From assembly GCF_046119375.1 (NCBI RefSeq), contig NW_027368056.1:1-52616 (forward strand): a DNA stretch of 52,616 nt, written 5' to 3'. The position numbers and the translations under genes were made by a program. The notes below the pieces were generated by a model. The model was not told where the DNA came from. It saw only the letters and a list, made by a program, of their open reading frames with translations, and made no database searches. The stretch is from Phyllobates terribilis (taxonomy: Eukaryota). Below, piece after piece: positions 1,269 to 28,773 of the stretch (the stretch's first letter is position 1; each line of letters starts with the position of its first letter).

Positions 1269-1285
1269 CCCCACGGTCGGCGCCA
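1269..1285 (-). other. Primer-binding site complementary to the tRNA-Lys 3' end
   Basis: Minus strand reads AACA-C-TGGCGCCGACCGTGGGG: an LTR end followed by a PBS matching the plant tRNA-Lys acceptor end, typical of Tat-clade elements. Confidence 0.8.
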
Positions 1286-1286
1286 G

Positions 1287-1768: not shown

Positions 1769-1861
1769 GCTATTGTCTTTTGTCTCTAAGGTTCATTAAG
1801 CCTTAGATGCGCTTCACTAGTATTGAATTGCGCTTTCGATACTTGAGATGCGCTTGATCAA

Positions 1862-4294: not shown

Positions 4295-4357
4295 ATGGAT
4301 CCGGCAAAAGTGCAAGCAATTCAGGAGTGGCAGCCGCCAACCAACGTATCGGAGCGA
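4295..4357 (+). pseudogene. Ty3/gypsy RT-RNaseH connection micro-fragment
   Basis: Translates to MDPAKVQAIQEWQPPTNVSE, matching the gypsy DPxKVxAIxEWPxPxNVxE motif. Unrelated sequence on both sides. Confidence 0.7.
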
Positions 4358-4566
4358 AGAAAGATCGAAGACGAAGATTTTCTAAACGCAGTGCAGGCAC
4401 TGAATGGAAAAGACCCGAGGCCTAATAATAGGTCGACTGTACCCTCACGCGAACCTTATTGAAAACTCAAGGCAAGCGCTTGTCGCTCTTGATATGTATT
4501 CTATTAATGCGCTCAAATGAATTGATTCGCTAATGAGCTCACTCAGCCGGAAGATTCTCCTGCAGA

Positions 4567-4596
4567 GAGCCGGATGAGGGGAGACCTTCACGTCCG
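4567..4596 (+). other. Group II intron domain V fragment
   Basis: GAGCCGGATGAGGGGAGACCTTCACGTCCG is a domain V hairpin of the plant mitochondrial type. Domain VI and a downstream exon are not recognisable. Confidence 0.7.
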
Positions 4597-4889
4597 CCTC
4601 TTACTATATATGCTTTGGTTCAAAGCTGCCTCGTTTGGTTTCGAGAGCTTCCCCCTCCTCGTCCCTTAAGGAGTAGAGCATAAACCTAAAAGAATTAAAG
4701 AGGCCCCTTCAAGAACAAGAAAATGACATCGTGTTTTCCATTCGATCTCGATGAAACAAAAATCAACGAGCGCCTTTTTTTCGCTATGTAGGTTCAACTA
4801 CCTTTTGATGTGGGCCCTATCATTCCTTCCAAATCTAAAGATCATAGGGTTGAGGGTCCGTAGTACCCGAAGCACTGGAGTGATCTGAA

Positions 4890-4927
4890 CCGTGCAGTGT
4901 TGTAGCTAACACGTTAAGTATCCCGCC
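4890..4927 (+). pseudogene. rrn16: Plastid 16S rRNA micro-fragment (38 nt)
   Basis: CCGTGCAGTGTTGTAGCTAACACGTTAAGTATCCCGCC against recalled plastid CCGTGCAGTGCTGTAGCTAACGCGTTAAGTATCCCGCC: two transitions (C>T, G>A). Confidence 0.7.
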
Positions 4928-5259
4928 AATAAGAAAGAGATTTTTCTTTTGCAGGACATCAGACTACTGATCTTACTCCAAGAGATTCAATATCGAATTT
5001 TCGGAAATATATTAGCAACTAAGAGAGAACAGTAGATCGTCCCAGGTCCACTAGACCCGCCCTCTAGCTGTAAGAAGCTTTTCGGATCGTTCATATCCCT
5101 AGCTTGAATGAAAGCTGCACTCGACCTTTCTTTTTTACTGCTAGGCCAGATAAGCGCCTTCTTTAGTGAGATTATACGAGCAAATTCCTGAACCAAAATA
5201 TGTTATTGCGGAAAAGAACCTCCTACCCGAACCATTCTTAAGACCGCCAAGCCCCCTCA

Positions 5260-7186
5260 GTTCCTCGGCAGCACCTCGAAGTGCATTTCGTTTTCTTTTA
5301 CCGATCTAATCCAGAGTTCTTATGTGTTTACACGCCCCTTTGAGACCACAGAGGGTGAGTCAGGGCCTAAGATCAGGCCGAAAGGCGTAGTCGATAGACG
5401 CAACACACCCAATCGGTTGGAATTGAAAAAATTCTGTCCCAGGGGCCGTCCTGCGAGGCCAGAGTGGTGGGATCAGCAGTCAGCGGCTATAAACACTTTT
5501 TTGTTCCTATTAACAAAACATCCTCTTTTTCTTTGCATTTTATTCTTCCCCCTATGGTCGTAGGAACTTCAGAAGGAAAGAACTTCTGCAGCCGAGGGTC
5601 GAAGCGAGCGAGTTGGTTTGTGAGGACCTAGTATGTAATGGACTATATTCCTCGATCTAGGTGTATCACCTCCACCTACTGGCACTTTTGTAATCCTCTC
5701 CATCAGATCAGTAAATTTGAGGATTTTATACAGGAGACCTCAACCAAGCTTTTACACATTAGGAGACCTCTTGTTTGAATTCAATGGTATAATATAAGCT
5801 ATTAACCGATCACAACTTGAATAATAATACAACCTTTTTTTATCCTTGGCAGGAATTCTTTTAAAATTGGGAACTTACGGGTTTTTAAGATTTTCAATAC
5901 CCATTTCATTGGAACAGTATAGTACATTAAACAATAAGGGCGCTCATCTCTGGATGACCAAGCGTGGGAGTACTCCTCTTACAGCAAAAGCTGGGGAAGA
6001 AGAAGCTGAAACAGCCATATCCTAACCAGATTCGGGTCCATAGCCATGGGTTACAATGCACGAGATCTTGTAGTAGAGGAATCGGACTCATCAACAGAAA
6101 GAGTCAAATAGAATACAGATTCTATTCATGGTTAAAAATGGACACTATTTGGGCTAAGCTCGATCGAGAGCGACTGCCACCTCAAAGACTTCGCACTTTC
6201 AAGATGAGAGCTAGAGGCCAAAGACGAAAAGGGAGGCGAAGACCGGATGTTCATTAACAGGCTGGCAAGGCGCGAAGATCAATTGATCAATATGAATCTC
6301 GAGAGTGAATGCTTGACTGCCCAATTGGACTGGATCCCCGTTCAACCCGAAATCGGAAGTGAAGCCCTCGATTAGCAAAGAGCTACCCCAACGAGCTCTC
6401 TCCGCTCTATCCAATAGACTATTTGCTAAAGTTTGAGATAACCACGCCTCTGCTAGGCAGCGTGTGGAATGGACGGGGTTTCCATGGCTCCCGGGCCTTC
6501 TATGATTCCAAAAGATGATCCAGAATTGGGTCAATCGTCTTGTGCCATATGTACTGAGATTGTTCGGGAGACATGGTCCAAGCCCGGCTTTCAAAAAGTG
6601 ATTTCAACTAAAGCTTTAAGTAAACAGATCCTTTAACTTGACAGGTGGAACTGCCTACCTGCGTCGGCTTGGAGTCAACAAAATCGAGTGCCAACTCCCA
6701 TTTCGAGACCCCATATTATACCAGCATCTTTTTTGGTTTGAAAGGCGTTGTTAAGCGAAAACTAAGAGAAAGAAGGTCAATTGGGGGTCGTTGAACAAGT
6801 GTCCCTGCTGTTGCTCCTCTGGTGAATTTAGCTCTTTCGGATTATCTCGGAAATTATGCCTCTCGATCTACTTACTGCAGCCCAGGAAGAAAAACATCGT
6901 CTAGGGGAACGTAGAATGTAAGAGAATTTCAAATGAGAACTCAATTTCGTACGAAGTATGACTTGCAGTGAGCCCCCAATTCGACTAGTTCAGTTCAGTT
7001 AGCAATTCAATCAGATTTCGATGACGAGGCCGAGAAATTTTTCTCAAACCCGTAAGCTACTTCCTTTAGTTGACCAAATCTGTAACCTTCATTAGCAGAT
7101 TCATTTTCTGTGGTTTCGAAGTCAAATCAAGAAGCATAACAAAAAATGAAGAAAACGAAATGCACTTCGAGGTGCTGCCAAGGAAC
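5260..7186. repeat. 38-bp inverted repeat pair (5260-5297 and 7149-7186)
   Basis: GTTCCTCGGCAGCACCTCGAAGTGCATTTCGTTTTCTT matches the reverse complement of 7149-7186 with 1 mismatch, at a CG site. Confidence 0.85.
6029..6073 (+). pseudogene. ycf2: Plastid ycf2 micro-fragment
   Basis: Translates to FGSIAMGYNARDLV against recalled Ycf2 FGSITMGSNARDLV. Flanks do not continue the match. Confidence 0.7.
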
Positions 7187-8109
7187 AATAGCTGCTTGCT
7201 TGGCTTCAAAGCCTTACCTGCCAATAGGCGCCTATCCTCCCAGAGCTGGCCTAATCAGGAAGCTATAGTGAAAATTCGGCTGACAAAGAAAAAAAGGTTT
7301 CGTCGAGATAGTTTTCGTTTACCAACGCGTAGGTAGTATAAGTTCCTATGACCGAGTCTTTCTGGCCCCTCAAAAAATATGGCAGATTAGCGAGTCCTTC
7401 GGTAACGGAAATGGGGGGCACGTCTGCCGGCACAGAAACAACGAGCATTTCGGTCAATAAGCCGGAGAAATCCTTTCTTTCTCGTCCACTCAGGGGGGTG
7501 CGGACACATCTGCGTGCTAGCATTGAAAATAGATGACGTGAACTTGACCTCGGCTGACACGTTGACTGCCCTCAAGACTATTTCAATAAGAGACGTGTTT
7601 GGGCCCGCCTTGAAGACACCCAGGAACTGCTAGTACCACAGTCTTCACCAAGACAGCAGGAAGGAAGAGAGTCGTCCCCTATCTGAAACGACTACCTTGT
7701 ATCGGGTGAAGAAAAGAGGGCGGTAGGCTTAGTAGGGCTCGCGGCAGTCAAACGAGGGCGTGAATGCGAGATGCCAGTGGAATGATCGGTCGGACAGAGG
7801 TTAGGGCTGCTAGATAATGGAATACGAAAGAAAGGTAGGCGCTTTACATGCTTAGCCTCTTAGGGTAAGCAAGCCATGCCTCACCACTTGAAAACCCTCC
7901 TCATCCACTTCCTGGTCAGTTTTCTCAGAGTTGGAAACTGAAACTTGAAAAGAGAGAATTTCTGAGTTCCGCACCCGGTTACCAGAGAAGAGGGTGGGAG
8001 TAGATCAGCGCTATGCACCTTGCCTTGCTCAAAGCCAACGTGATGCTCCTTGGTCAGATGACCAAAATATTGGCGAATACCACATATGATGGATTTTGGG
8101 TGAGGGTAG

Positions 8110-8145
8110 AGGAGGTAAGATGATATCTTGAGCAGTTACACATCC
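8110..8145 (-). pseudogene. rpoA: Plastid rpoA micro-fragment
   Basis: Minus strand translates to GCVTAQDIILPP against recalled RpoA GYVTAQDIILPP. Only 36 nt long. Confidence 0.55.
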
Positions 8146-10542
8146 AGACATTGATGGTCATACATACTTGTTTATCAGACTCCCTGGTTTACCGACGCCG
8201 TGTCCTCGCCGTGTCCTCGTCGCCTCCTCTTATAGTTCTAACTCTTCGTTCCATATCGAACAATTGGATCTATTATAGGGGCCGGATTACGCCTATTCAT
8301 CTCTTTGGGCTTCTATTGAATCGAGAAAGCAAATCGCGCGCAGAGGTTCGAGACCAAGGTGTCGTGTAGGCGTCCAAGCAGGATCTGAAGTATCTGCCTT
8401 ATTGGGTCCTAAAAGTTGGAGTTGGTACCTTTCCTTTGTCTAAGGATCCTGCACATATCACTAGCTGATTAGGCAACTACCTTTCTTTCATCCGTAAAGT
8501 GAAATAAAAGAAGTGTTCTTGCTTTGTTTGGATGTTATTGCCTTTGCAGGCGAGGGAGATCCATAAATGAAAGACGAGAGCAAGGGGTTCCGTCACCCGT
8601 TGCTTGATAGCACACAGAAGACGGCCGCCGCGTTCGTAGCGGAGGTCCATGGCACTAGACCGGTTGAAGGAAGATTCATCCATTCGATCTCGCTTGATGA
8701 AGAGCTTCTACTGGATGTCATACCGGGCATTCAGTCTTCAGGTTCAGAATGGCCAGAACCACACGTGCAAGTTTCCCTGCATCCTTTGGTGTCGGCGGGT
8801 TCCTTTCTTGTCTTGACCAAAAGCCTCTTGAATCTTCTCTTTCCCTATTTTTTCTTTGGTTTGTTAGTTGTGTGTAATTGGCCCGGTCGCCCTACGCGAC
8901 TGGCGCTTCAACGGAATTTCACCATGATGAAGCAATCCTTTGTGAGAAATTCGACTATTAAAATCTTTCCCGGCCCCCCTCCGACCGGGCTCTAGGCCCA
9001 GTTATCCTATATTTACTTGTAATTTTTAATTTTTACACTTTTTATAAGGTGATATATGAGAAATACATAATTTATAAAATGACATTTACCAATATCACTT
9101 ATGTGATCAATAGAGTCATTTACTTTTCAGTCTTTGTCTCACTCTATATTAGAATTTGGATTAAGATAAGATTGACACCCACTACTTCATACTATTATTT
9201 GCAAAAATAAGATAAATATTTGGAAATTAATACCTATTTTTTGTCTGTCTTCACTTGCCAAAAATAAGATATATATGATGTGACATATTCAAATATAGAC
9301 CTAAGAATTTTTTATTATATTTTTCCCGTAAATTTACTTATAAATCCCATCATAGTGAAAACAAGAAATTACATGTAATATATACTACTTGAATTAGGTG
9401 GACAAAGCAACGTACTTAGGCAGACATAATTCATCATAGTATTTTTCATGCATACTTATTTCTATAACATTTACAGCCAAATCAATAAAAATCTCAATAT
9501 AAATAATGGAAATCATCGTATAAATAAGCATGTAATTTATCAAATCAGATAAAAAAAATTTAGTGAACCCTCAAAAACACCTTATAATTAAAATTTTCCT
9601 ACATTAGTAAAGTAGTCTGTCACGTATGAGCTTCAAGACAAGTTTCATCCTAGAAGCAGTAGATTTAATAATAATTCTAATTTCTGCACAAAATATGATA
9701 GATTTACCGGATTATGTTAAAATAGTGGTGTATGAGTGTTTTCAACCTTCTTGATGGATCAAGACATGGTGACCTTCTTGATTTTATATTATAAATGTCT
9801 ACTGTGCTATGGATTGTGGATTATTTTCTTTACGCATGAGCGAAAATATGTCTATTTATATGCACTCTTTACATAACTATTAACTCTTTTCTTGAAGGTG
9901 AAATGGTAAAACATCTAGTCATCAGGATTCATTTATGGGAGAAGGAGGTAAGAATATTAAGGGATTGTATGAAATGATATCTAGCAACTAATATGTTTTG
10001 ATCGTATATTTGAAAGCATTGGAATTCGAATGGTTTGAGAAGTAAACTGTTTTGACTTTAACTCAAAAGAAGAAGACGAATTCCTCCTACTAAATACTGA
10101 AATATGTTTCTAGTTTTATTTATTTGAGTTATTTGGTTTTCATTTTATAAGTTAACGCATTAAAAGAAAGAAAAAGCTTACTATATTAAAAAGAATTAGA
10201 ATTAGATTTATAATTATTAGAAAGAATTATAATTAGATTTAAAATTAGAAAAAATAAGAATTAGAATTAGGATTCATTTGCATTTTTTAAATTTTTTTTT
10301 CAAAATAATGGTGCCTTAATCTAAAGGAGATTAAGGGTTTTGGTAAATATGAGCAATAAAGTGGAGGATATAAATGAAAAATAATGGTTAAGATGTTTTT
10401 TTTGAAGGACATAACGGTAATTTATAAGTTGACTTGAAGCCATTTAATGGACCTTCAACTCAACTTTTATAGTATACTAGAATCATGTTATATATGTCAA
10501 TATTTTAGTTTATGTGATGAGTTTAATTTATGTTTCACGTAG

Positions 10543-11502
10543 GTGTAATTCTAGTTTATTTCATACAATGTTAAATAGGTCTAATATTAATACTATAAAT
10601 ATATTCATATAGGTCTAATCCTAATTTATTTTATACAATTTTAAATAAGTCTAATTATAATATTATAATTATCTATTTATTGTATACACAAACATCTATT
10701 TATATTATATAATATGCTCTCATATCAGATGATTAAGTGATATATATATCTTGTATGATATAGCTGTGAATAATTAGACGTTCCAAATATCTGAGACTCA
10801 AATATTATGTGTAATTCTAGTTTATTTCATACAATGTTAAATAGGTCTAATAATAATATTATAAATATATTCATGTAGGTCTGATTCTTATTTATTTTAT
10901 TCAATTTTAAATAGGTCTATATAAATATTATAATCATATATTTATTATGAAGATTGATCGGGTGCGAACTAATTTTTGACGCGGACTATTACAGTGCACC
11001 AGTATATTACTGGATAGTGCACTAGTATATTACTGGATAGTGCACCAGTGCACTACTACAAAGTGCACCAGTGTACTACCGTAGAGTGCACCTGGTAGTG
11101 CACTACTGTAAAGTGCACCAGTACACTATTGGGGGTGCACCTTAGTACACCGAGGAGTGCACCTTAGTACACCGAGAAGTGCACCAGTGCACTACTGGGA
11201 AGTGCACCTTAGTACAACGAGAAGTGCACTAGTTGTGCACCAGTAGTGCACTGAAAGAATGCACCAGCAGTACACTTGATAATGTACTTGAAGTGCACCA
11301 ATAATATGCTGAAAAGTGCAGAGTCCGCATAGTCCGCACCGAAAATCAGTCCGCACCGGAAACGTCTTCTATATATTATATACACGAACATCTATTTATA
11401 TTATATAATATACTCTCATATCAGATGATTAAGTGATATATATATCTTGTATGATATAGCTGTGAATAATTAGACGTTCCAAATATTTGAGACTCAAATA
11501 TT
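10543..11502. repeat. Tandem duplication of an approximately 266-bp AT-rich unit; second copy interrupted by a MITE
   Basis: Both units start GTGTAATTCTAGTTTATTTCATAC (10543 and 10809) and end GAGACTCAAATATT. Confidence 0.85.
10949..11369. mobile_element. Mutator-like MITE (421 bp) with an internal GTGCAC tandem array
   Basis: Imperfect TIRs of about 39 bp (GAAGA...GGTGCG.ACT.ATTTT...GCGGACT). 10-bp TSD TATTTATTAT/TATATATTAT (1 mismatch). The empty site is visible in the adjacent duplicate unit. Confidence 0.8.
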
Positions 11503-13793: not shown

Positions 13794-14265
13794 GAATAGG
13801 TTAATCGGGTGCGGACTAACTTTTTCGTGCGGACTGTGCGGACTATGGTAGTGCACCAGTATATTACTGGATAGTGCACCAATGCACTCCTAAAAAGTGC
13901 ATCAATGCACTACTATAGAGTGCACCTGGCAGTGTACTACTATAGAGTGCACCAGTAGTGTACTGAGGAGTGCACCAGTACACTACTGAGGAGTGCACCA
14001 GTAGTGTACTTAGGAGTGCACCGGTACACTACTGAGGAGTGCACCAATAATATACTAAGGAGTGCACCAGTGCACTATTGGGAAGTGCACCTTAGTACAC
14101 CGAGGAGTGCACCAGTACCCTATTGAGGAGTGCACTAGTAGTACACTGAAAGAGTGCACCAGTAGTACTATTGGTAGTGTATTGAGAGTGCACTAATAAT
14201 ATGCTGAAAAGTGCACCAGTTGTGATAGTCCGCACCGAAAATTAGTCTGCACCGGAAACGTCTTC
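13794..14265. mobile_element. Second copy of the GTGCAC-array MITE
   Basis: Same ends as 10949-11369 (AATCGGGTGCGGACTAAC... and ...CCGCACCGAAAATTAGTCTGCACCGGAAACGTCTTC) and a similar array. Left terminus degraded; no TSD found. Confidence 0.75.
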
Positions 14266-14565
14266 GCAAAATTGTTGAATATGTATAAAATAAAATTTAT
14301 GAATAAAAAAAAAGACAAGGATGTAATGATGATGCAACCTCATTGATATAAATACATATAAAAAATATAAATAATAGTCTTGACGAAAATAAATAATAAT
14401 TTTCTAAAAAGGTAATAACACTCTAAGTATTTATGTAATAGTTAGGGGATACTAAATTACTACATCAATCAATTCATAAAGATGTCAAAGAGAACAAATT
14501 TTTATAGTTTTGAATTTGAGTAGTATCGGATTCCAGTCGATTAGTCGAAAAACTTCTTCATGTAA

Positions 14566-17278
14566 CACTACTAGAAAACACCTTTTAGTGACGAAATTAA
14601 ATTCCGTCTCTAAATATGCTAAATAGCGATGGATTTCACGACGGATAGGGTACATGTTGCACATTCTTCTAAACTCGAGATTAGCGACGGATTTTCCGTC
14701 GTTGATCCGTCACTATTTTGGCGACACAAAGGGGTGCCTAGTTTTCAGGATTAGCGACGGAAAATTAGCCACCTAAATTTTAATGAAAATTAGCGACGAA
14801 TTCACTAATCCGTCGCAAAAAAGAGGGGACGTATTGAGATTTAGCGACGGACGTCCCAATTCCGTCGCTAATTAGGGGACGTATCGAGTTTAGCGAAGGA
14901 CATGAGACGTATCGAGTTTTAGCGACGGACGACCCTAGTCCGTTGCTAATGAGGATATAACGCGTTTTAGCGACGGACTTGGGCCGCCCATCGCTAAAAT
15001 AAAACCCGATTCCACTTTCTTTTCTTCGTTCTCTCAGTTCTTCAAACCGTTCTCTCATTTCTTCGTTCTCTCAGTTCTATTCTTCTTCGATCTTCCTTTC
15101 CTTCGAGCATCTCCTAGATCTATCTCCTCTTCGAGCTTCCTTCTTTTGAGCTTTCATGAACAAGTTCCGATGGGGAGAACGATGAGGATTTTGACTTCCT
15201 TCTTCCATCGAAATAGGTCATCGACCCGATGGAAACGATATAAAGAAGCTGTCCTCGAGCGCCCCAAGGCTCCAGGTTTGCCGTCTAATATTCTGTTTTT
15301 TCTTCTCACCTAATTCTATATTGTTTTTATTTATTTGATTGATTGGAATGGAGGTTGTCAAGTGAATTTTGCTTACTGTTTTAATGATTATTTTGTTGAG
15401 GAGTTGATAAGACGAACCAAAATGACAACAAAATCATTATTTAGCTTACATGTATGATCAATTTATTGTAATATGATTCTTTTTCATTCTTTAATCAACA
15501 AGGTATTGTCTTTGGTTAGAAAGATACAATGATAATGATGGTATATGAACTACAAAGTCAACTCCTTTCTTTCATTTTGAATTGCAAGATTTGGTGTATG
15601 TATTAAAATACACGAATCACTAAGTCATGCTCATGACAACTCTGCTATTTCTCGTCACCTCCACCCATTGTTATTTTCTTTGACAGCTATGCAGATCACA
15701 AGGCCATGGATCCAGAATAACAGACAATGCTTCTCGTCGTGGTTTATTCTTCCAATCCAGTAAAGGTATTGGTTTGGTGATGGTGGGGTTCTTATAGTCT
15801 AGGAGTTGTCTTCTAAACATAAGCCTAAATGAATGATTTGCAATTCATTATTGTGCATTTTTCTGCAGTTAAATTCCATTTAGCAGCTACACTGCCATTC
15901 AGGATCCGGTTCATTAAAAGGGGTTATGCATTACATTTTAGTAATGCATATATAAACCATTCAGGCACACGTATAATATCTATTGCACAAATCTGACAAA
16001 TATTTGTAGAACAAGCACAAACCTAGAAACATACACTCGATTACACTACATCATATTCTTGGATCCATGTGTCAGGTAAACTAACATTCTTTCCAATTTC
16101 CAAGATATCCTTCTTTGTTCAATATACTTGGATTTTGCTTACTGGGCTTTGGAAGGAAAAAAATCATTGTCAGTTTTTGGGTGTACTGTAGTAGCAATTA
16201 CATGTATAATTGGACAATACTTCATACTTGGTGGATATAGAAAGTGTGAAACTAGATTCTACCTCCTTTGTTATTCTGCATTCATGTTTTTTTTGTTGAT
16301 TTGTTGATCTTTTGCAACAACAAGTTGGAGTGTTCTTAGCTGTAGTCATATATATGCATAATCCTTGAAGCTTGATGGTTATAGTGCTTAGTGAGAGCAT
16401 TTACTGATTTGTATCCATATTGTAATTTTCTTGTGAAGTATTAACTTCGTACCGATAATACCATGTGTTCATACATTCTTTTTCCTGCCTATGAACTCAA
16501 TGTTGAATAGGAAGTAACACCATGGAAGCAAAGGGTGCAACAAACCCATTCAGAGAAAACAAAGGTGCAGTTCTAATGATTTGCAAGACATGCGGGAAAA
16601 AAAGATGACCATTGGACTTCAAGACGTCCTTACATGGATCTCTCAACTCCAACCAACACTTTTGTTGACAAGCCAGCAGATTCTACTACAACTTCTTCTA
16701 AAGGAGCCTATATTCCTCCATCACATATATAGGGGCATAGAAAGGCCCACAACGAGAGGCTAATTTACACAAGCTCTTTAGGCCGTTTGGATCTATTACT
16801 CGTGTGTTTGTCCCTATCGAATCATTTATACGAACTATGTTTGTAATGATTTGTATGTTTGTTTAAATGACAATGTTGGATTTTTCTTTTAATTGACAAT
16901 GTTGCATTCAAATCATTTGTACGGAATAACGACGGATGACGACGATGTTGAGATAGATGTGTGTCCAAATAAAGACGACTTTTGCGTCGGATTAGTGACG
17001 GACTGTCGTCGCCATTTTGCTCACACGTCGTTCGAGACTATTGGATTTGGTTATGGATTTCCGTCGCTAAATCCGTACCAAAGTGTGTCTCGTCGGAGTC
17101 GTCATTTGCGACAGACTTCCGTCGCCAAATCCACCGCTGATTTGGCGACGGACACCGGTTCCGTCGCAAAATATTTTTGCGACAAATTATACGAGACAGA
17201 AGCCGTCCGTCGCGAATTCGTTGCTAATTAAAGTTAGCGACGGATGCCATATGATTAGCGACAGATTTTATAGTAGTG
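14566..17278. mobile_element. Non-autonomous CACTA (En/Spm) transposon, 2713 bp
   Basis: TIRs CACTACTAGAAAA / TTTTATAGTAGTG (1 mismatch). 3-bp TSD TAA on both sides. Dense subterminal TAGCGACGGA/TCCGTCGCTA repeats at about 14590-15000 and 16905-17265. No transposase. Confidence 0.92.
15156..16750 (+). pseudogene. eIF3g: Captured eIF3 subunit G remnant inside the CACTA (2 exons and 1 intron, disrupted)
   Basis: Exon 15156-15275 gives MNKFRWGE/DEDFDFLLPSK*VI..DGNDIKK/VLERPKAPG. GT-AG intron 15276-16510. Exon from 16511 gives GSNTMEAKGATNPFRENKGAVLMICKTCGKK/DDHWTSRRPYMDLSTPTNTFVDKP...SKGAYIPPS. These match plant eIF3g motifs (KFRWGE, LLERPRAPG, GAVLMVCRTCxKKGDHWT, AYVPPS). The RRM is absent. 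Confidence 0.88.
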
Positions 17279-20218
17279 TAAGACCATGTTGGATTAGGGT
17301 CAAATCATGTGATATTCAGGTAGAGCGAACATACCGAGATTGTCAAAATCATCATTTTGATAATAAATTTATCACTAAACACTATTATCGTTGATCTTGT
17401 GCATAAAGTGCTAGTTATTTCTAATCACCTTCAAACAAACATATTAAAATGATGTAAGAATATTCACTTTAAGAGTTTATGTCTTTTGATCTTGAAAGTG
17501 CATGTGAAGTGAGTATTTACATATAAATTTTTACCTTGAAAATATATCTGGAACATTGTTTATGTAAATTATGATGTATTTTTTTACAGGTAAACAGAAG
17601 ACTTTCATAAAAAAAACTGAAGTCATATAAAAAGATGATTGTGAAAAAATCATGAACAAGTCCAGATGAGTTATGGAGACCTAAGAACTCATGTCGAGGA
17701 AGAGACAGATTCACAGTCGATACATCAGAATGAAGGAAAGCCCCCTAGCAAAGGGTATAAATATTAACTGTCTTGGACATAATAAAATTTGCATCTTTGT
17801 TAGCTTTTCGAAAGCAATGAGACAAATGCATTGGAGTGAATGATGAAAGGAGACTTCTAGCTTTAATGATCTTTTTAATTTTTCAAGACACTTTTCATGT
17901 ACCCTTCAATGTTGTGCATGTCTTCTTACTCTAAAGAATATGCAAGTTGACATTGTGTATGTGAATTCCATAAAATATACAATCCAAAACCAAAAATGGC
18001 AAATAACATGTATTTCTATTTTTTGTATCTAATATGATTTGTTTAACCGACACAACGATAAAATCATATTTTAGATTTTACCATTTATCTTGAATTATAT
18101 CTTATAAGATTTTCTGGCATATGCCCTTACTAGCCAAGTCGACGTGGCTCCACTGGTATGGGGTATTTCCTTCTTACTAGTTTACCCATGTTCAACTCCG
18201 ATGGGTGGCATCTCCAAATTAGTTAGAATGGGATCACCTTAAAGAAAAAATCTCGATGACAATGACAAAAATATCATTGTTTACATTTTACATCCTTAAT
18301 ATAAGGAGTTAACATGTATCTCATATATGCTCAACAAGAAAAACTAGAGATTATATTTGGATTTCATAATCATTATTCAAACTTTGAAATCTTAGTTTGA
18401 ATTTTCTCTTACTTCTCTCCAATAACGCATGATTGTGTTTAGAATTAAACACAAACATAAACACGGATTTAGATTGAAAAACTCTCCTTTTTATTTCTCT
18501 CATTTCAAAATTTTTCACCCCCTTTTACAAATGGGTTAGCAGATCTATATATAGGAAAAAGGGGAGGGTGTGCTTGTGAGATGCCCGAGACAAGTGTCGC
18601 GTACCCATGCTGCACGTTTTTTTAATTGTCCTTAGGCGTCGATCCTTGATTGGACCAAAAAGGGGTCTTGCTTCGATCATGTATCGCTGTAGTGTAGACC
18701 ACGTTAAGCAGGAGGTCAGTACGAACAAGGGGTCTACTCTGCCATGACAGCGATTGGCTTAATCTGTATTAACTTATCATTAAAGGAATAAATATCGGCT
18801 AACTGTGCTACTTTAGTATCGCGATCTATCAACACAAACAATCTATGTGTATGTAAACTAATTATTTATAAATACAAGTAAGCCTGGTTCACAAGCGAGT
18901 GTGATAAGTTTTTAAAGACCCCTACTAATGTTTAACATATATTGATAGAGTGATTTGAACTTCCCGAGTTGATAATAGAATCAAACATGATTTTCCTTTT
19001 ATACTCTCCATTTAAAAATTTGGTCACCAAATATGTGTGATATTAAGAGGCCAATAATAGAAATAATATATATTATTTATAATATAAGTTCAATAAGAAA
19101 ATAATTATTAGATACACCGGATGATATCTAGTGAATTAACTTGTATAAAGGATACAATGAACCATACCCTTGATCTAGTAATTTGACATTACTTTCTATT
19201 AAGTGTTTCTATTTAGAGGAGTTTGATTCCTTCTCAAGAAATGTCTACTTGCAAGATGACCAAACCCGTAAAAGTACAAATACGAATTACTCTTGCAAGT
19301 ATGAAAATATTTTTTCGTAATCTTACTGCCCTAATTCAAACTTATATTTATGAAATTGTTGAGTTTGAATTTTCTCATAAATGTATTGACTAGTTTGAAA
19401 ATTAGGGACTCGTACTCATCCATAATGATGCTATTGATAGATTTATTCTGATCGATAATTTGTTATAATTTCCCGTATCAGTAAAAAAAAACTTATATTT
19501 ATGAATATTTTCTTAATTTGATAAGTTATATTTTCTTACCTAAAATCGAGCAGGCACTCCAATGTGGGGCCGGTCTCCTTACTCCTTAGCCACCGAAGCA
19601 GCAAAGTCGGCTATTCTTTCGCCTCATTTCGCCTGTCACCTACGGAGTATAAAAGACCCCCGTTTCTTTAGGTTTCCTCTCTCTCTCATCATCCTCCTCT
19701 CTCTGTTCTGCCCGAAAAATAACGCTCCAATAGATTCCAGATTGTAAGACTTGATCCTTCTCTCTCCCTCAATCAAAACCAAGACTTCATCCCGCTGAGT
19801 TTTTATTCATGAAAATCAAACTGCTGTTGACATTATCTGTTGTGAATTGTTGTTCCAGGTCTGGAGTTGCCCATAGCATTAGACAACCATTTCTGGTGTT
19901 TATTCTGAGTAGTCATTCTTTGGTCCATCTTGTAACAGAAAACATTTCAATTTAGGTTCTGTATGTGTATCGATATTCATGAAAAAGACTTATGTAACTC
20001 CATACCTATATAGATATGCGACTTTGACGATTATTTGATCACATTTCATGAACCTCAGTGCTTTAGCCATTATTTAAACTGTGATTTATCTGCTTTATTT
20101 TCAACCTAGACCCAAATTTCGAATTTGATGGTAAATTTGCAGATATATTCAGCTAATTTGGAAAAAAGGAGAGGAGGTACTTCTGTTCGTTGCGTGAATC
20201 TATCTTTGTTGGATCATC

Positions 20219-23200
20219 ATGGAGAATATGGTACAACTTGAAGCACTTTGTGAAAGGCTGTACAACTGTCGTGATTCTGCTGAACGAGCTTTCCTAGAGA
20301 GTACTTTAAAGAATTTTTCTGTTGATCCAACTTGCATTGCACAATGCCAATACATACTAGGCCGTGCAGGCTCTCCTTATACCGTGTTGTTGGCTAGTTC
20401 AAGCTTGATGAAGCAAGTCACAGAGAACAAGCTCCCATCACATCTCAGGCTTCCGATTCGTAATTTTCTTGTTTGCTAATGGCGTAACTTTCTGATTAAG
20501 CAATTCCAAATATTCTATATGTATTATATTGACAAAAATCGCTTGATCATAGAACATACTCTTATCAAATTAATTGCAATGTAATATGGAAGTTTTCATC
20601 TTTGGACTTTAGGCTCTCTAAATATTGTCGTAGTCTGTATATAGTTGCCGTTATATTATTTCTGTTAAATTGCTGTACTTACTATTCTTTAACCTCTCTC
20701 GTGTATTTGAAGGTGATTGTCTTGTAAATTATCTGGCTTCTAGAGGGCGTAACTTGGAGTCTTTTGCAATGACATCATTAATTCAGCTACTCTGTCGTGT
20801 GACAAAGTTTAGCTGGTTGGATGATGACAGATTTAAAGAACTGGTAAAAATTTGTGCAAGTTTTCTTGATCAGGTAAGCTTCGCTCTGCATCTGGCCTTT
20901 TTTTCCGTGATATAGGTGCTATCAATTAAAGATACGCTGCTATTCGGTTCTTATAACTTGTATAATTACTATTAAAGATATGTTGCTTTTCGATTCTTTT
21001 TGGTTTGTTCTTTTCTAAATCATGATCCTTTGAGTTTCCATTGTAGGATATGCCCTATTATCAGGAGTAAGTCGCTGTTTTATTACGTCATTAATTTCTT
21101 GTGCGGTATTTCTCCTTATCTTTATGTGAACATACATAGACATCATTAATTCTATTTGTCGGTATGTGTGGACTTGCATCTTATCGCCTGTAGTACAGTT
21201 GTATATATTTCTGATGATTTTTTGGTTTGTCGTTTTCCGAACTATGATGCTCTAATATTTCCATTCAAGGATGATGGCTCGTAAGTTGGAATATGTTTTT
21301 ATGCTATTAATATTGTTTGCAGTAGTTTATTTTATTATGACCAGATACAGGCAGTGATGTCATCAAGTTTATTTACAGGAAACATTTCAGTATGAGATAG
21401 GACTGAAGATATTGAACCAGCTGACCACTGAGATGAATACAGTAAGCTTGAGAAATCTTATACCATATGCTCGAATCCTTTGAGTTGCATGACTAAGTAA
21501 TTCTGAAGTTATTTTATACTACATTCTCTTTGTATCTGATTCGAATTTACAATGATTTGTCAGCAAAATCCTGAATTGACCTTCATGCAACATCGAAAGG
21601 CTGCAATATCTTTCAAAGATGACTACCTGCTTCAAGTATTTGAAATGTCTCTCGCTTCGCTGTGTAAACTGAAAAGTGATGGTATGAATCTACCCGGACT
21701 TTTTTTTATCTTCTTTTATTCCTTTCTATGAAATTGCATGCTCTAGCTTATCTTTCTTGTTTGGATTCTAATTCTTATGCAAATTGTATATCAACTATCT
21801 TAATGATTGCAGCCCGAACAAAACTTCAAGAATTGGCTCTTTCACTTTCTCTAAGATGTCTGTCTTTTGATTTCACTGGAGCATCTTCTGATGAAACGTC
21901 AGATGAGATTGGTACTGTTCAGGTAAAAGTTTATCCTCTAATTTTACCTTTCTGAGTTAGTTTGAAGAAGATGTATGATCATTAATCACCTATACTTTGT
22001 TGATGCTGTAAGTTGAAAATGTTTTTGTGGTTTCACAGGTTCCGTCCTCCTGGAGACCAGTAATCGAGGAACTGTCAACAGTGCAGGTCTATTTTGACTA
22101 TTATGCAATGTCTAAACCTCCTCGTTCAAAACAGGTTAGCTTAATCTCTTTCAGTGTATTATGATAATCTGTAGATTTTCTTTTCTGATTTTTCCCTATC
22201 TATATACAGCAATAGCATGTTGAAATAAGTAAATTCAAATTTATCAACAGTTGATCTGGTCTTGCTCATCATGTGGAACCTAACTCATATAGGTTGAGAA
22301 AGCTAATTTATCTACAGATGAAGGTCAAAATAAGGTTTCTAACCTTGAGTTTACTAAAAAAAGTTGCATTATATTAATTCAGGCTCTAACCAAATCCTTC
22401 ATGCATGCCTTGTATTACTGTATATATTGAAGCTCTCTTTGGGTCATTGCTTCAGCTTATTCTCTGCTCAAAGAGGATATTATCATTTGCATAGTGACAT
22501 TTTAGTTGTTGCAAACCTTTGTTCTGACTTGCTTTTATTTTCAGGCTCTGGAATGTTTGGTGTGGCTTGCTTCTGTGAGAAGAACCTTGTTCACAACTGA
22601 CTCATCGCGCTTGAAATATCTGGCCGCATTGATGGCAGGGTCTAAGCAAATAATGGAAACAGGAAGAGGTTAAATGGATGATGATACTTATTTTTTCCCA
22701 TCTTTTCCAATTTCTATTAATGATATCCTACTTGTATAATATATCTATTTATTTGAATGCTTTGTAATGTAAGGATCTGATCGTTTAACCTCATTCAATC
22801 TCGACTTCACAGGAACAATATTAAAATAGTTAGAGGTCTGCTAGTTCCAAGTCTTTGCTTTTGCTGTACTTGGACTTTACACATGGCATTAATACCATCT
22901 TATTTCTATTTTGATTGTGGCAAGTTAAATTACGTAACTCTAGAAAGTTGACAGTCTTTATCCTTCAGATACAATTATGGATTTTTCGGGCATTCACTGA
23001 ATACCATCTTCAAAAGCTACAAGATCCTGGAAATAGTCAAACCTGGGAATCATTTTAGAGGATGTGTAACCTTTGTCTTCCATTTGTTGATTTTAGGTTT
23101 GGATGATCATGATAATTACAATGAGTTTTGTCGTCTCCTTGGACGTTTCAAAGTGCATTATCAGGTATGCCAGCATCATTCCTTTCCATTAAATTTAGCC

Positions 23201-26200
23201 AATTTGTTTGGAAATCGTACTCCTACTTGTGTAGTCAGAACATATGGAAATTTTGATGTTCCCTATGAGTTATGAGTTATAAAACATTCTTTTACTTTAA
23301 ATTACATAAAATTAGTATATAAGTAAATATTTTTACGGGCATTATTTTATTGGATTTCACGGGCATTACTGCTAATTTTATAATTTTTACTAAGCAAACC
23401 CATTCTCTCCTAAGTCCTGCATAAGCGAACCCTTTATGTCATTCATGCATTGATCATGAATTGCTATTATGACTATATTAGGTTGCTTTTTTGAACCAAG
23501 ACTTGTCAATACACTTATCATCATGATGACTGTGTTCACGTGTTCAAAATAGCAATCACATTCTATGTAGCATAGCTCATGCTTCTTATTGAGAGATAAT
23601 ATCTTATCTAAAATCTGGCTTATACTAATAAAAAATGAACCCGGTGGTTATGATGTTATGCTTTTTTGTGGGCATTGATTTCAGCTTTCAGAGCTGGTGA
23701 ATAGGGAAGAATATGGTGGTTGGTTGAATTCAGTGGCAGAGTTCACTGTGAAGTCCTTACAGTCATGGAAGGTTTTTTTTAGCTTCTTCTACTTCTCAAT
23801 AATTCACAGATTATTTAGCTTCTCCAATAACAGTGAAAATGGAAAACTTTTACTTGTTTGTACATAATCCTAATCAGTTGTTATTACTAATTGAACATTT
23901 GCTCTTAGTGGGCGAGAAGCAGTGTATACTATCTACTTGGGCTGTGGTCTCGGATGGTAACATCCCTGCCCTATTTTAAGGAAGGCACTGCTCACCTGGA
24001 AGATTATGTTCCCATGATTTTGCAAAGTTTCATATCTTCAAGATTTGATTCTCTTCAGGTTTGATGCACTAAATCAGCTTATTTTGTAATTGTTCTGTTC
24101 CTATCTTTTCTGGGGTGTAATATTATGTTTTGGGCAGGGTGAAGACATTTCAGAAGACCCTCTTGACAATACTGAAGTGCTTCAAGATCAGCTTGATTTT
24201 CTGCCACATCTATGCAGATTTCAGGTGTGTTGTCTAATGCCTCTTAGACTTAGTTTGTATATTCTGAAGCTGTATTCCTAATGAAATTTGATATATTTGT
24301 TCCTGCTTTGCAGTATGAAGGTTGTGGAACCTACATTATGACAATTATGGACCCAATTTTGCAGGCCTATGTGGTATTTCGACTATCTTGGATCTGTTGT
24401 CATCTTTTCTTTTAGCCCCCACTTAGTTCTCTAATATGGTTGCATGTATCTCTACAACTGCAATTATCTGGGCAGAGTGCAGCAGGAATCCAGGATAATT
24501 TCAATACTGATAAATATGAAATCTTGGAGCACCAACTTGCTTGGATAGTGCACATTATTGCAGCCATTCTTAGAGTTAAACAATATTCTGGCCCAAGGTA
24601 AAATAAATTATTATAATCATTTAGAACATTATGTGAAGATTAGTAATCTTATCATGTTGTTGCTCCTGGCAGTGTGGAGCTGCAACAAACAATAGATGCA
24701 GAACTCTCAGCTCGTGTATTTCAGTTGATAAATGCTATGGACAGCGGAGTGCACTCTCAGGTATTGTGTAACGAAGACTTCTGCAGTATTCTTAAATTTT
24801 GTTGCTGGAGAAAGATGCTAGAGAAAGTTCATAAGCGTACGTAGTGAATACAAAAATGAGGAACTTTTGGATCATTTTGGAAAGTTAGTAAGCAGAATAT
24901 AAGTTTCTAATACTTCTATACTCCTCACCTGCTCTCTGGTTATTATTGATAATATTTTCGCCTGTTACATTGCACATCACATCCTATAATCATTATATAT
25001 CTATTTGGTTGAAGTCATTATTAGGGTGTTACAGGTAGGGCTAGGTTTTTTTGTGTGCTTATATTATACTTCGGTATTTCTTGCATTGGTTTGTTTCTTC
25101 AGTATTCATCTTTGTTTTGACTGACTTGTCAAAGAATGCTTCTTATGCATGCCTTGTTGTATTTTCTTCCTTTGCTTCATGCAGAGATATTCTGAACAAA
25201 GCAAGCAGAGACTTGATCTTGCAGTTCTCTCATATTTTGAAAGTCTCAAGAGGTCTTACATAGGTGATGATGCAATGCACGCATCTAAGGTATATATATT
25301 TGAGAAAAAGGACATTATTTGACTACATCTACTAATGAAAAAGGTTCTAGTCTTATTTTTATCATTTACTTGCAGCAATTCTATGTTCGACTCTCATCAC
25401 TCGTTAGATTGCATGACCATCTGTTGGTCTTGAATGTAATGATTCAAAAGCTAGCTTCAAATCTGAGGTTTTATGTAGAGGTAAATGTAAATTTTGTTAT
25501 GTATAGAATCAGTCTTTCATATGCAGGACTTCATCCTCTGATTTTATTTCTTTTGCAGAGTAAAGAGATCATCGATCAAACTTTGAAATTCTTCCTGGAA
25601 ATGGCATCAGGGTTCGTTTTTCGTAAGAAATTTATTATTTCAGTTTTGACTTTTGAGGTCATGCTTGCCGTAATTATGTGAAGCTTGAACAGGTATATGA
25701 CTGCAAAGCTACTTCTGAAGCTGGACTCAATTCAGTACATCATACTGCACCACAGTGTAACATAATTCTCTTCTAATGATTTCATTACTGCAGTTTTAAA
25801 CCTGATATTACACGTAACAATGAATACTGATTTAATTGCTTCTCCATCTAGCGAGAGCACTTCCCATTTCAGGAAAATTATGAGTTAACTTGCTCAAGAA
25901 CAACCTTTTACTATGCCATCAGCTCACTTATGTTTGCAGACGACAATCTCTCAGTTACTTTTAAACGCTTCATGGAGCCACTCTGGCAGGTAGTGCAAAC
26001 ATATAATTGTTTTCGTTTAAATAAAGAAATAAGATTCTATAAAGGACATATACTTTCAACAAAAATAAAACTAAAAGTTCAATTATATTCCCATAAGGTT
26101 TCGGTGAGTTTAGAGCCAACTCCTGATTCGTTGTTCCGCAACGACGGTATAAAATACGCATTAATTGGGTTGGCACGGGATCTTAGAGGAATTGCAATGG

Positions 26201-28773
26201 CTGCTAGCAGGTGATTGATTACATAATCCTTTCACATGGCATGCTTCTCATTTAACAAGAGGAATTGTAGTGTCTATAACAGTGTCCTTTTTTTTGCAGC
26301 CGCAAGACATATAACCATCTTTTCAATTGGTTGTATCCAGCACATATGCCTCTTCTCTTGAGAGCTGTGAATCAATGGGCTGATACTCCTCAGGTATGGA
26401 ACTTACCTTCGACAAATTACAACTAGATTTTTATTTTTATTCAGCAGTTGATTGTGGAGATGTAGCACATTATGATGTATGAATCATGCTGATAGGAAAT
26501 GATGCTGTGCAGGTGACAACACCAGTGTTGAAATTCATGTCGGAGTTTGTGCAGAATAAGTCTCAGAGAATAACATTTGATCCTTCATCTGCAAATGGGA
26601 TATTGCTTTTCCGGGAAGTTAGCAAGTTTGTTGTTGCTTATGGATCAAGAATTCTCTCATTTCCAAATCAGAGTGACTTATACACCTTTAAGTACAAGGG
26701 GATATGGCTTTCGTTAACCATGTTATCTGCTGGTGTGTGCTACAATTCATTTCATACTATATATCATAGCAAACTCCCCTCTCTGCCTCCTGAATAATGC
26801 TTTTATTTTCTTCTTCCTTCTGAAAAATGAACACTGTATGAAATAAGATACATACTGTGAAATATGAATCTCAACATATATGATTTCTTTTATAGTTATG
26901 CTGTTGCTGTATTCATCTCATGTGCCCATTTCCCTGAAATTGCAGCTCTTTCCGGAAACTATGTGAACTTTGGTGTGTTTGAGTTATATGGTGATACAGC
27001 AGTGTCTGATGCTCTTCATGTTGCAATAAGGATGGCGTTGACAATTCCGTTTGCTGACATTATGGCATATAGCAAGGTATTTTAGATGCCACTTATTCCC
27101 CATAAGCTATCTCTCGTGTCTTTTGCATGACTTATGTGGATACTAGTTTAACCCGCATGCCATGGACGGAATTTATCTAATATTTTTTTACTTAAAATAA
27201 ATAATTTTTTAGATATATTATAATTTTAAAATATATATTAATAAATAATGCTAGTAAAAATATCATATTGAGTCACAATATAAGTAATTATCTTTCTCAT
27301 AGATAAAAATAATGATTGTTTTTATATAATACTTTCGTTATAATTGTGATTGTGTGTATTCTTTATTTTAGTCATTTCCCATTTTTCTTTATAGGGTATG
27401 TTTATAATCAAATGTAAGAAAATGTTGGATTCTAGTTCTTTCTCTTATAGAGATTTTTTTTCTACCTACTGTTTTCTTTTATTAAGTCAGAGTATCTTAG
27501 TCATATAATAGTGAAGGAAATGTTTATAATTTATGCTACGTATCTGTCAAATTGGATGCCATGTAATTATAGTCCAAAAATAACAATGCTCTTAAAATTT
27601 GACACGATTAGAAAACTGTTAAGAATTAATGAGAAGATGACATGTGTCCAAATCAATGAAAGACTGGCACATAGGCTGTTTTTCGTGTAGATGCAGCAAG
27701 TTATGCCCCAGACTAAATCATTTTTAATCACCATAAACTCTATAAAGCCTATTTTGCTACTGAAATGAATTGTTGCAAACATGCAATCACACATATAAGA
27801 GGTTATAATCTCTTTCCCTTGTCCTTTACGGTTCTTCCGTTTTCAGGTCACAAAAGCCTATTTCACTTTCGTGGAGATAATTCTCAGAGACCATATCAAA
27901 TTTGTTCTGAGTCTCAACACAGACACTTTCTCATATATTGTCAAGTCTCTTGAGTTAGGCCTTCAGGCTTTTGATACAGGTGTTGTATCTCAGGTGAGCA
28001 TCTACATAGACGACTTATTAAAGCTTGCAATTTATCACTATCATTTATATTCCAGTGAAAAGCATGGAAACCTTTTTCATTTTTTCAATTAATTAAAATT
28101 ATACTTTCCAGTGTGCTTCCTCCATTGATCATTTGGCAACTTGCTATTTCAACCATGTTGTGATGGGAGAGCCGCCGGCTTCACCTGTTGCAATAAATTT
28201 CGCGAAGCATGTTTCAGAAGGTCACGACGTCTTCCCAAGAGTGAGTTTTATTTCTAATACATATTGCCAATATCGTTTTCTCTCAGTGATGGACTATCTA
28301 GTAATGTGAGTGGATCTTATTCAATGTCAGATACTCAAAATGATATTTGAAATGCTTCTGTTTCAAGACAACAGCAGTACTTGGAGTCTTAGTAAACCAA
28401 TTCTCAGTTCGATTCTCATGAGTCAAGAGGTAATTGTATTAGCCTTTGCTTTTATGTGCTATATTGCTGGAAAGGCGCATATTCTAACTTAATTTCCTTT
28501 ATTTCTTATAGATGTACGCCCATGTGAAAGCACAGATCTTGGCTTCATTGGTAAGTTTTACTTAGTTTTTTGAATAGTGAGGAAAACTTGGGAGCTTTTT
28601 TTTTGCTATACTGACAGAATTAATCTGTAATCCAGCCATCAGAACAACAGCTTAGGCTTCAGCAGTGCTTTGAGAAGCTTATGGAAGATATTAGCCCAAA
28701 CCTGGAACCGAAAAACAGGGAAAAGTTCACACAGAATATGGTGAAATTTAAGACTGAATTTCGTGGAAAATAG
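20219..28773 (+). CDS. XPO7: Exportin-7 / RanBP16-like importin-beta family protein, 28 exons, 1049 aa
   Basis: Exons: 20219-20459, 20713-20873, 21379-21441, 21564-21681, 21813-21922, 22039-22134, 22545-22668, 23097-23164, 23685-23771, 23909-24058, 24138-24224, 24314-24373, 24476-24597, 24673-24760, 25185-25289, 25376-25480, 25559-25611, 25693-25756, 25852-25989, 26098-26210, 26300-26393, 26513-26732, 26946-27076, 27847-27993, 28112-28240, 28331-28429, 28512-28550, 28636-28773. All introns GT-AG; sum 3150 nt, in frame. Motifs QLEALCERLY, EFCRLLGRFK, SGNYVNFGVFELYGD. Confidence 0.93.
27143..27453 (-). mobile_element. Small non-autonomous Helitron in XPO7 intron 23
   Basis: A|CTAG at 27143 with a degenerate hairpin at 27152-27169. 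Minus-strand 5' end A|TCTCTATAAG at 27453. The reconstructed empty site is AT. Confidence 0.6.

What the first reader, a model, noticed from the sequence alone, without database searches (positions are those of the whole stretch)
14566..17278. Pack-type CACTA transposon carrying a captured, intron-containing eIF3g gene remnant
A cleanly bounded CACTA (TIRs, TAA TSD, subterminal repeats, no transposase) holds two eIF3g exons in the right order and splice phase, joined by a 1235-bp GT-AG intron. The intron shows capture of genomic DNA, not cDNA. Exon 1 has a large internal deletion (IKK joined to VLERPKAPG), stops and frameshifts. Exon 2 keeps the zinc-ribbon region but ends before the RRM. Gene capture by CACTAs is known but much less often described than Pack-MULEs. 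A TE-borne copy of an essential translation factor could produce siRNAs that act on the parent gene.
Basis: partly seen in the sequence, partly recalled or inferred. Interest (0 to 1): 0.75.

Follow-up and report, generated by a model that had tools for sequence, protein, structure and literature searches.

The report
Pack-CACTA transposon carrying decayed eIF3g
A 2.7-kb non-autonomous CACTA transposon in a plant genome carries a badly decayed, intron-containing piece of the translation-factor gene eIF3g; this is a genuine but ordinary example of a known kind of gene-capturing transposon.

Summary
Window 14566-17278 is bounded by 13-nt CACTA inverted repeats (CACTACTAGAAAA, and CACTACTATAAAA on the other strand) and by TAA on both sides. 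It holds 29 copies (2 mismatches or fewer) of an 11-nt subterminal motif, TTAGCGACGGA. In the 52.6-kb window this motif occurs only in the element's two end regions.

The interior carries co-linear eIF3g fragments. A 120-nt exon-1 remnant lacks about 58 codons. A 1235-nt GT-AG intron follows at exactly the position and phase of the single intron of the Eucalyptus grandis eIF3g gene. A 311-nt exon-2 remnant comes last. There are at least four frameshifts and two in-frame stops, the last zinc-knuckle Cys is lost, and a second internal deletion is present.

The ATG is at 15156. About 23 residues of the RRM are present, so the cargo does not end before the RRM.

No transposase is encoded. The element is best read as a Pack-CACTA that inserted here as one unit, 2.9 kb upstream of an exportin-7-like gene, with an inert cargo. 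I could not reach the parent locus, other copies, transcription or siRNAs.

The scan's first readers also noted two other Pack-CACTAs elsewhere in this genome. Verdict: a new member of a known kind, of low to moderate interest.

The parts
14563..14565 (.). Left target-site duplication, TAA
   Evidence: Read directly. It is identical to 17279-17281.
14566..14578 (+). 5' terminal inverted repeat, CACTACTAGAAAA
   Evidence: (I20). The same 13-mer is the TIR of FbCACTA1 in Flaveria (PMC13369971).
14579..15000 (.). 5' subterminal region with 17 TTAGCGACGGA-like motifs on both strands; CpG observed/expected 1.8
15001..15155 (+). CT-rich leader directly upstream of the eIF3g ATG, probably the captured 5' UTR (and perhaps core promoter). 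It contains the telo-box-like AAACCCGA at 15007-15014 (window coordinates).
   Evidence: Read. By analogy, the E. grandis eIF3g leader is CT-rich with AAACCCTAG. This is inference and was not tested against the parent gene.
15156..15275 (+). eIF3g exon-1 remnant. It reads MNKFRWGE / NDEDFDFLLPSK* / PDGNDIKK joined to VLERPKAPG. About 58 codons (aa ~50-107) are deleted, there are three frame changes, and TAG at 15214-15216 and TAA at 15241-15243 are in-frame stops.
   Evidence: blastn 15168-15251 to the E. grandis CDS, 68%, E 4e-06
15276..16510 (+). GT-AG intron, 1235 nt, phase 1, at the conserved single-intron site of eIF3g. It is CpG-poor (observed/expected 0.33) and holds no recognisable protein fragment.
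16511..16821 (+). eIF3g exon-2 remnant. It holds the linker and the CCHC zinc knuckle, with a frameshift in the A-run near 16600 and the last Cys changed to Arg at 16625-16627. TAG at 16730-16732 is a stop. A deletion of about 22-25 codons removes RNP2. Then comes the RRM piece QREANLHKLFRPFGSITRVFVPIE. About 47 C-terminal residues are missing.
   Evidence: (RRM_1, E 0.017)
16822..16928 (.). AT-rich tail of unknown origin with short internal duplications. It could be parental 3' sequence, filler DNA or the element's own DNA.
   Evidence: D18, D19; no protein similarity
16929..17265 (.). 3' subterminal region with 12 TTAGCGACGGA-like motifs on both strands; CpG observed/expected 2.0
17266..17278 (-). 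3' terminal inverted repeat, CACTACTATAAAA on the minus strand
17279..17281 (.). Right target-site duplication, TAA

Best explanation
This is a non-autonomous CACTA (En/Spm-type) DNA transposon of the Pack-TYPE class.

Its two ends hold everything needed for mobilisation in trans by the TnpA- and TnpD-type proteins of an autonomous relative: a 13-nt TIR plus about 350-430 nt of TTAGCGACGGA subterminal repeats. Everything between the ends is passenger DNA copied from the genomic (not cDNA) eIF3g locus of the host. The passenger comprises the leader, exon 1, the gene's single intron and part of exon 2.

Shown here: the anatomy, the eIF3g origin, the conserved intron site, the absence of transposase coding capacity, and the coding death of the cargo.

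Inferred: (a) the whole unit transposed into this TAA site, 2.9 kb upstream of an exportin-7-like gene; (b) capture happened elsewhere and much earlier, either by the neighbouring-insertion and aberrant-excision route described for Arabidopsis Pack-CACTA or by gap repair; (c) the internal deletions arose by abortive gap repair during later transposition cycles; (d) the cargo has no protein function and is at most a source of non-coding RNA.

The ends are well kept (8 perfect 11-mers, CpG retained, TSD intact) while the cargo is heavily decayed. This fits an element that stayed under selection for mobility long after the capture.
For: TIRs, TSD and subterminal repeats lie only at the two borders.

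The same subterminal motif lies next to canonical CACTACAAGAAAA termini in unrelated plant-derived metagenome contigs L042 and L020. It therefore looks like a real CACTA end motif rather than a local oddity.

The cargo is eIF3g: phmmer E down to 1.5e-12, and the hits carry PF12353 plus RRM_1. tblastn and blastn hits are co-linear for both exons.

The intron has the same site and phase as the only intron of the E. grandis gene.

No Pfam family other than a weak RRM_1 was found in any stop-free segment of the exon regions, the intron or the tail. The subterminal-region reading frames were not scanned. About 790 nt of ends plus about 1.9 kb of cargo leave no room for a transposase.

The lesions are listed.

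Pack-CACTAs that carry exons and introns of passenger genes are documented (PMC6379663, PMC8903248).
Against: Only one copy was seen. No second copy, autonomous partner, parent locus or empty site could be examined, because no plant genome or read collection was reachable.

A 3-bp TAA match on both sides has roughly a 3-4% chance in this AT-rich DNA, so unit transposition is likely but not proven.

The 107-nt tail and the leader are assigned to the cargo by inference only.
Confidence: 0.85

Rival explanations
1. A resident eIF3g pseudogene (a decayed local duplicate) was flanked by two separate CACTA insertions. Each lost its inner end, so this would be a nascent composite that has never moved: the first step of the Catoni model caught in place.
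For: This is the published route by which Pack-CACTAs are thought to form (PMC6379663; review PMC13317346). Only a single copy was seen here.
Against: The same TAA lies outside both outer ends, as expected for one insertion event. The two independent insertions of this model would not be expected to leave the same 3-bp sequence outside both outer ends, except by chance (about 3-4%). No inner TIR remnants or inner TSDs are present. The neighbourhood shows no other eIF3g-like sequence. The cargo is far more decayed than the ends.
Confidence: 0.07
2. The element is still doing something. The captured leader or promoter drives a spliced non-coding transcript whose small RNAs act on the parent eIF3g gene or on related elements, or the insertion alters regulation of the exportin-7-like gene 2.9 kb downstream.
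For: The leader, the ATG, the GT-AG intron and a polypyrimidine tract before the acceptor are all kept. Donor-gene siRNA conflict has been described for captured fragments in maize (reviewed in PMC13317346). A CACTA with the same 13-nt TIR supplies an enhancer in Flaveria (PMC13369971).
Against: No expression or small-RNA data could be obtained. Nucleotide identity to eIF3g coding sequences of other plants is only 64-69%. The heavy decay makes long perfect matches to the parent unlikely. Nothing indicates selection on the cargo.
Confidence: 0.06
3. The resemblance is chance or an artefact: an AT-rich intergenic stretch with spurious inverted repeats and spurious protein similarity.
For: The exon-1 pieces taken singly give weak tblastn E-values (0.07-0.55). 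The PDB and Pfam hits of single pieces are weak.
Against: There are 19 motif copies against 0.2 expected, confined to the two borders. Only the two terminal copies match the TIR pattern with 1 mismatch or fewer. Exon-2 E-values are 1e-11 to 1e-22. The fragments are co-linear and the intron sits at the conserved codon and phase.
Confidence: 0.01

Closest known systems
Arabidopsis Pack-CACTA1a family (Catoni et al. 2019, PMC6379663)
   Same: Both are non-autonomous with CACTA-type TIRs and a 3-bp TSD. Both are a few kb long, with an interior made of host gene exons and introns and no transposase.
   Different: The TIR differs (CACTACAA... in Arabidopsis, CACTACTAG... here), as does the cargo. 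Mobility was shown in real time for the Arabidopsis elements and is only inferred here. Copy number is unknown here.
Soybean Tgm-Express1 (Zabala and Vodkin 2007, PMC1947982, cited in PMC13317346) and the morning-glory Tpn1 family (cited in PMC6379663)
   Same: These are CACTA elements that carry intron-containing fragments of host genes.
   Different: Those elements carry fragments of several genes, and their spliced chimeric transcripts were shown. Here a single donor gene is recognisable and no transcript data exist.
FbCACTA1 of Flaveria bidentis (PMC13369971)
   Same: It has the identical 13-nt TIR CACTACTAGAAAA and a 3-bp TSD, a similar size (2820 bp), is non-autonomous and has asymmetric subterminal repeats.
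   Different: Its subterminal motif is different, TTG(T/A)(C/T)GCA(A/T)N, so it is another family. It carries an enhancer, and no gene fragment is reported.
CACTA ends in metagenome contigs L042 and L020 (sample Ga0153959)
   Same: They have the same subterminal motif TTAGCGACGGA / TCCGTCGCTAA in both orientations, directly inside a CACTA terminus.
   Different: The TIR is CACTACAAGAAAA, one base different. Beyond the repeats, sequence identity is only about 74-83% over short stretches. The host plant is unknown.
Rice and maize Pack-MULEs
   Same: They show the same logic: terminal repeats mobilised in trans, genomic gene fragments as cargo, and frequent pseudogenisation.
   Different: They belong to another superfamily (Mutator), with long TIRs and a 9-bp TSD.

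Membership tests
CACTA (En/Spm, DTC) superfamily | Termini 5'-CACTA...TAGTG-3' forming a short TIR | tested here: met
   A 13-nt TIR matching at 12 of 13 positions, at 14566-14578 and 17266-17278
CACTA (En/Spm, DTC) superfamily | 3-bp target-site duplication | tested here: met
   TAA at 14563-14565 and 17279-17281
CACTA (En/Spm, DTC) superfamily | Arrays of short subterminal repeats in direct and inverted orientation at both ends | tested here: met
   29 TTAGCGACGGA-like copies, 17 at the left end and 12 at the right, on both strands and nowhere else in the window. The same motif lies beside CACTA termini in L042 and L020.
CACTA (En/Spm, DTC) superfamily | An autonomous TnpA/TnpD-encoding partner with matching ends in the same genome | not testable with these tools
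Pack-TYPE / Pack-CACTA (PMC6379663, PMC8903248) | No transposase coding capacity | tested here: met
   Pfam scans of the stop-free segments of the exon regions, the intron and the tail found no transposase domain. The subterminal-region reading frames were not scanned. The 2713-nt length is filled by the ends and the eIF3g cargo.
Pack-TYPE / Pack-CACTA (PMC6379663, PMC8903248) | Interior derived from host protein-coding gene(s) | tested here: met
   eIF3g fragments with the intron at the conserved site. Alignment to the parent locus of the same genome was not possible.
Pack-TYPE / Pack-CACTA (PMC6379663, PMC8903248) | Belongs to a cluster of at least 2 related elements (packFinder removes singletons) | not testable with these tools
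   The window holds one copy. Protein-word searches with a reading frame from the subterminal region, and exact look-ups, found nothing. Scan notes list two other Pack-CACTAs in this genome, but I could not read their sequences.
Functional eIF3g gene | Intact reading frame with the eIF3g N-terminal domain, CCHC zinc knuckle and complete RRM | tested here: not met
   At least 4 frameshifts, 2 in-frame stops, two internal deletions, the last Cys changed to Arg, and the RRM truncated after about 23 residues

The most novel reading that the evidence does not exclude
The element kept the eIF3g leader (and perhaps promoter) and a spliceable intron. It may be transcribed and feed small RNAs that touch the essential parent eIF3g gene, an 'epigenetic conflict' case for a translation factor. 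Alternatively, it may be one of many amplified copies that spread eIF3g fragments through the genome.
Probability: 0.05. Interest if true: 0.5.

Novelty: new member of a known kind. Interest (0 to 1): 0.25.

Why it matters
It is a clean, fully bounded example of gene capture by a CACTA element. The conserved intron site shows that the copy came from genomic DNA. It is useful for curating the transposon library of this genome, so that the eIF3g fragment is not annotated as a gene, and as one data point on which genes Pack-CACTAs pick up. It does not change what is known about the mechanism. It would only matter more if the cargo were shown to be expressed and to act on the parent gene.

Tried and rejected
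No read, RNA or copy-number evidence was therefore sought, and read laying was not used.

Species and parent locus.
- A word search with the gag-like ORF 229-1518(-) found nothing.
- A word search with the 92-aa reading frame of the 5' subterminal region found nothing.
- Exact look-ups of ten window ORFs were all absent from the collection.
- Ranking 117 eudicot eIF3g proteins against the cargo gave no clear nearest taxon. Myrtaceae were best on one piece, but there is no intron or high nucleotide identity to the Eucalyptus loci.
- Two Logan contigs with eIF3g exon 2 (L005, L006) are no closer, at 64-65%.
- The Bienertia partial eIF3g locus came back without DNA.

Literature. The subterminal motif is not in the searchable papers. 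No paper links eIF3g and CACTA.

Second cargo gene. I looked for one in the intron and the tail and found none.

Empty site. I looked for a paralogous empty site in the window and found none. The left flank only repeats a nearby MITE.

A 13-of-14 match between 16869-16882 and the right flank 17282-17295 (D13) was judged to be at chance level.

Joined model. The spliced exon 1 plus exon 2 reading was not joined or searched as one sequence. The exons and frame pieces were searched apart, by reference.

Full report
**What is there**

Reading 14300-17500 shows ...catgTAA|CACTACTAGAAAACACC... on the left and ...TTTTATAGTAGTG|TAAgacc... on the right.

- The repeat finder reports the terminal inverted repeat at 14565-14578 / 17266-17279 (pair I20).
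- A pattern search for CACTACTAGAAAA finds only these two sites with 1 mismatch or fewer in the 52.6-kb window.
- The 11-mer TTAGCGACGGA, allowing 1 mismatch, occurs 19 times on both strands against 0.21 expected. Every copy lies in 14603-14977 or 16992-17265.
- With 2 mismatches there are 29 copies, 17 on the left and 12 on the right, and 8 are perfect.

This is the textbook anatomy of a CACTA element: a CACTA...TAGTG TIR, a 3-bp TSD (TAA) and asymmetric subterminal repeat arrays.

**The end motif is real**

One scan of metagenome contigs for a convergent pair of the motif returned mostly GC-rich bacterial hairpins. It also returned a few AT-rich contigs packed with the motif.

- In L042 the motif array starts directly inside a terminus CACTACAAGAAAA.
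- In L020 the array ends at TTTTCTTGTAGTG.

So the same subterminal motif flanks canonical CACTA termini in DNA of another plant.

The exact 13-nt TIR of the window element is also the TIR of FbCACTA1 in Flaveria bidentis. That element has a different subterminal motif and is therefore another family (PMC13369971).

**The cargo is eIF3g**

Single frame pieces were searched apart, by reference. The spliced, joined reading was not built or searched.

- Pfam gave only a weak RRM_1 hit for 16741-16863 (E 0.017).
- The only PDB hits of 16580-16729 were human eIF3g, and they were weak (E 0.16-0.22).
- The exhaustive representative search with that 50-aa piece returned 28 proteins with E of 1e-3 or better. 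A few of the strongest are long proteins matched in several repeated stretches at 36-38% identity. The single-stretch hits (best E 1.5e-12) are the eIF3g-like ones.
- The ten of these that I scanned all carry PF12353 (eIF3g), and most also carry RRM_1.

With the full-length Corchorus protein P0014 and others, local tblastn places the pieces as follows:

| eIF3g residues (P0014) | Window position |
|---|---|
| aa 16-49 | 15159-15251 |
| aa 108-119 | 15242-15277 |
| aa ~119-151 | 16510-16602 |
| aa 145-197 | 16580-16723 |
| aa ~228-250 | 16753-16821 |

Nucleotide blastn to Eucalyptus eIF3g gives 68% identity for exon 1 (E 4e-06) and 69% for exon 2 (E 3e-17).

**The intron**

The E. grandis gene (L002) has one intron. 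It follows ...GCT CCT G|gt and resumes ag|GT ACT, so it is in phase 1 inside the Gly codon of Ala-Pro-Gly.

The window reads ...GCT CCA G|gtttgc ... aatag|GA AGT. This is the same codon and the same phase. The 1235-nt spacer therefore occupies the gene's own intron site, and the copy was made from genomic DNA.

No other protein fragment is recognisable inside the intron or in the 107-nt tail.

**State of the cargo**

Exon 1:
- The ATG is at 15156. MNKFRWGE is followed by a frameshift.
- NDEDFDFLLPSK is followed by TAG at the conserved Gln position.
- A second frameshift lies near 15225. The VIDPMETI reading that it interrupts ends at TAA 15241-15243.
- IKK is joined out of frame to VLERPKAPG, so about 58 codons are missing.

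Exon 2:
- A frameshift lies in the A-run near 16600.
- The last Cys of the CCHC knuckle is Arg (16625-16627).
- TAG lies at 16730.
- About 22-25 codons, including RNP2, are missing.
- Then come 23-27 residues of the RRM (QREANLHKLFRPFGSITRVFVPIE). Similarity ends at 16821.

The best identity to any of 117 eudicot eIF3g proteins is about 65% over about 133 alignable residues. Those proteins share 79-94% with the Corchorus query. The cargo is a dead and old copy.

**The ends are better kept than the cargo**

The two end regions have a CpG observed/expected ratio of 1.8-2.0. The intron has 0.33 and exon 2 has 0.43. The TSD is intact. Nine of the motif variants are CpG transitions.

My reading is an inference. 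The ends stayed under selection for transposition while the passenger decayed, so the capture is much older than this insertion.

**Interpretation**

The element is a Pack-CACTA. Its ends are competent for mobilisation in trans, it encodes no transposase, and it carries a single recognisable donor gene.

The identical TAA outside both ends argues that the whole unit inserted here (about 3-4% by chance). This counts against the rival of a resident pseudogene bracketed by two insertions.

Capture could have occurred in either of two ways:
- by the route proposed for Arabidopsis Pack-CACTA: neighbouring insertions, complementary terminal deletions and re-mobilisation (PMC6379663, PMC13317346);
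- by gap repair.

The sequence alone cannot tell which. Pack-TYPE elements with exons and introns of passenger genes are well documented in Arabidopsis, rice, maize, soybean and morning glory (PMC6379663, PMC8903248). The intron is therefore expected rather than special.

**Context**

- The element lies in AT-rich intergenic DNA.
- About 300 bp to its left is a second copy (76% identity) of the MITE/minisatellite at 10951-11369.
- 2.9 kb to its right begins an exportin-7-like gene (IBN_N at 20198-20476, TPR_XPO7 at 25319-25681).
- Further right are arabinofuranosidase, DHHC and FSH1 exons.

**What could not be done**

- The species was not identified.
- The parent locus, other family members and an empty site were out of reach.
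- The scan's notes list two other first-reader Pack-CACTA findings in the same genome. These are unchecked leads. They fit a genome in which this class is common.

**Verdict**

It is a new member of a known kind, of low to moderate interest.

Noticed in passing
window 13798-14265: A second copy (76% identity over 473 nt) of the MITE/minisatellite at 10951-11369, with internal tandem structure, lies about 300 bp left of the Pack-CACTA.
   Followed up: partly
window 20198-31000 (+): An exportin-7-like gene. The IBN_N domain exon with a likely ATG near 20219 is at 20198-20476, and the TPR_XPO7 exon is at 25319-25681. The N-terminal exon looks rather diverged from what I recall of plant XPO7; this was not tested.
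   Followed up: partly
window 30598-30849 and 36724-37050; 31737-32045 and 38334-38633 (+): Two similar N-terminal-type exons, and two ASD1 (alpha-L-arabinofuranosidase) domain exons about 6 kb apart, suggest tandem arabinofuranosidase gene copies or fragments.
   Followed up: no
window 41863-42919 (+) and 45060-45380 (-): DHHC palmitoyltransferase exons and an FSH1 serine hydrolase exon.
   Followed up: no
window 1-9000 and 47500-52616: GC-richer blocks with long ORFs that look like retroelement gag or protease by eye. They gave no Pfam hit, and the first gave no protein-word hit.
   Followed up: partly
L001 5980-6527 (Eucalyptus globulus CM100870.1): A partial eIF3g copy covers aa 106-292 and runs without interruption across the intron site, so it is an intron-less (processed-type) fragment. 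Three partial eIF3g proteins are annotated on that chromosome. This is a contrast to the intron-bearing copy in the window.
   Followed up: partly
L045 8001-11219 (Coptis chinensis CM027378.1): Gene model KAF9622871.1 joins TPT and AMP-binding_C exons to a complete eIF3g exon 2. No CACTA-type termini were found in the 19 kb fetched. It may be another transposon-mediated shuffle or a merged gene model.
   Followed up: partly
L042 1186-1373 and L020 1-265 (metagenome sample Ga0153959): Plant-like contigs hold CACTA ends (TIR CACTACAAGAAAA) with the same TTAGCGACGGA subterminal motif. L019, L009 and L035 also hold dense arrays of the motif core.
   Followed up: partly
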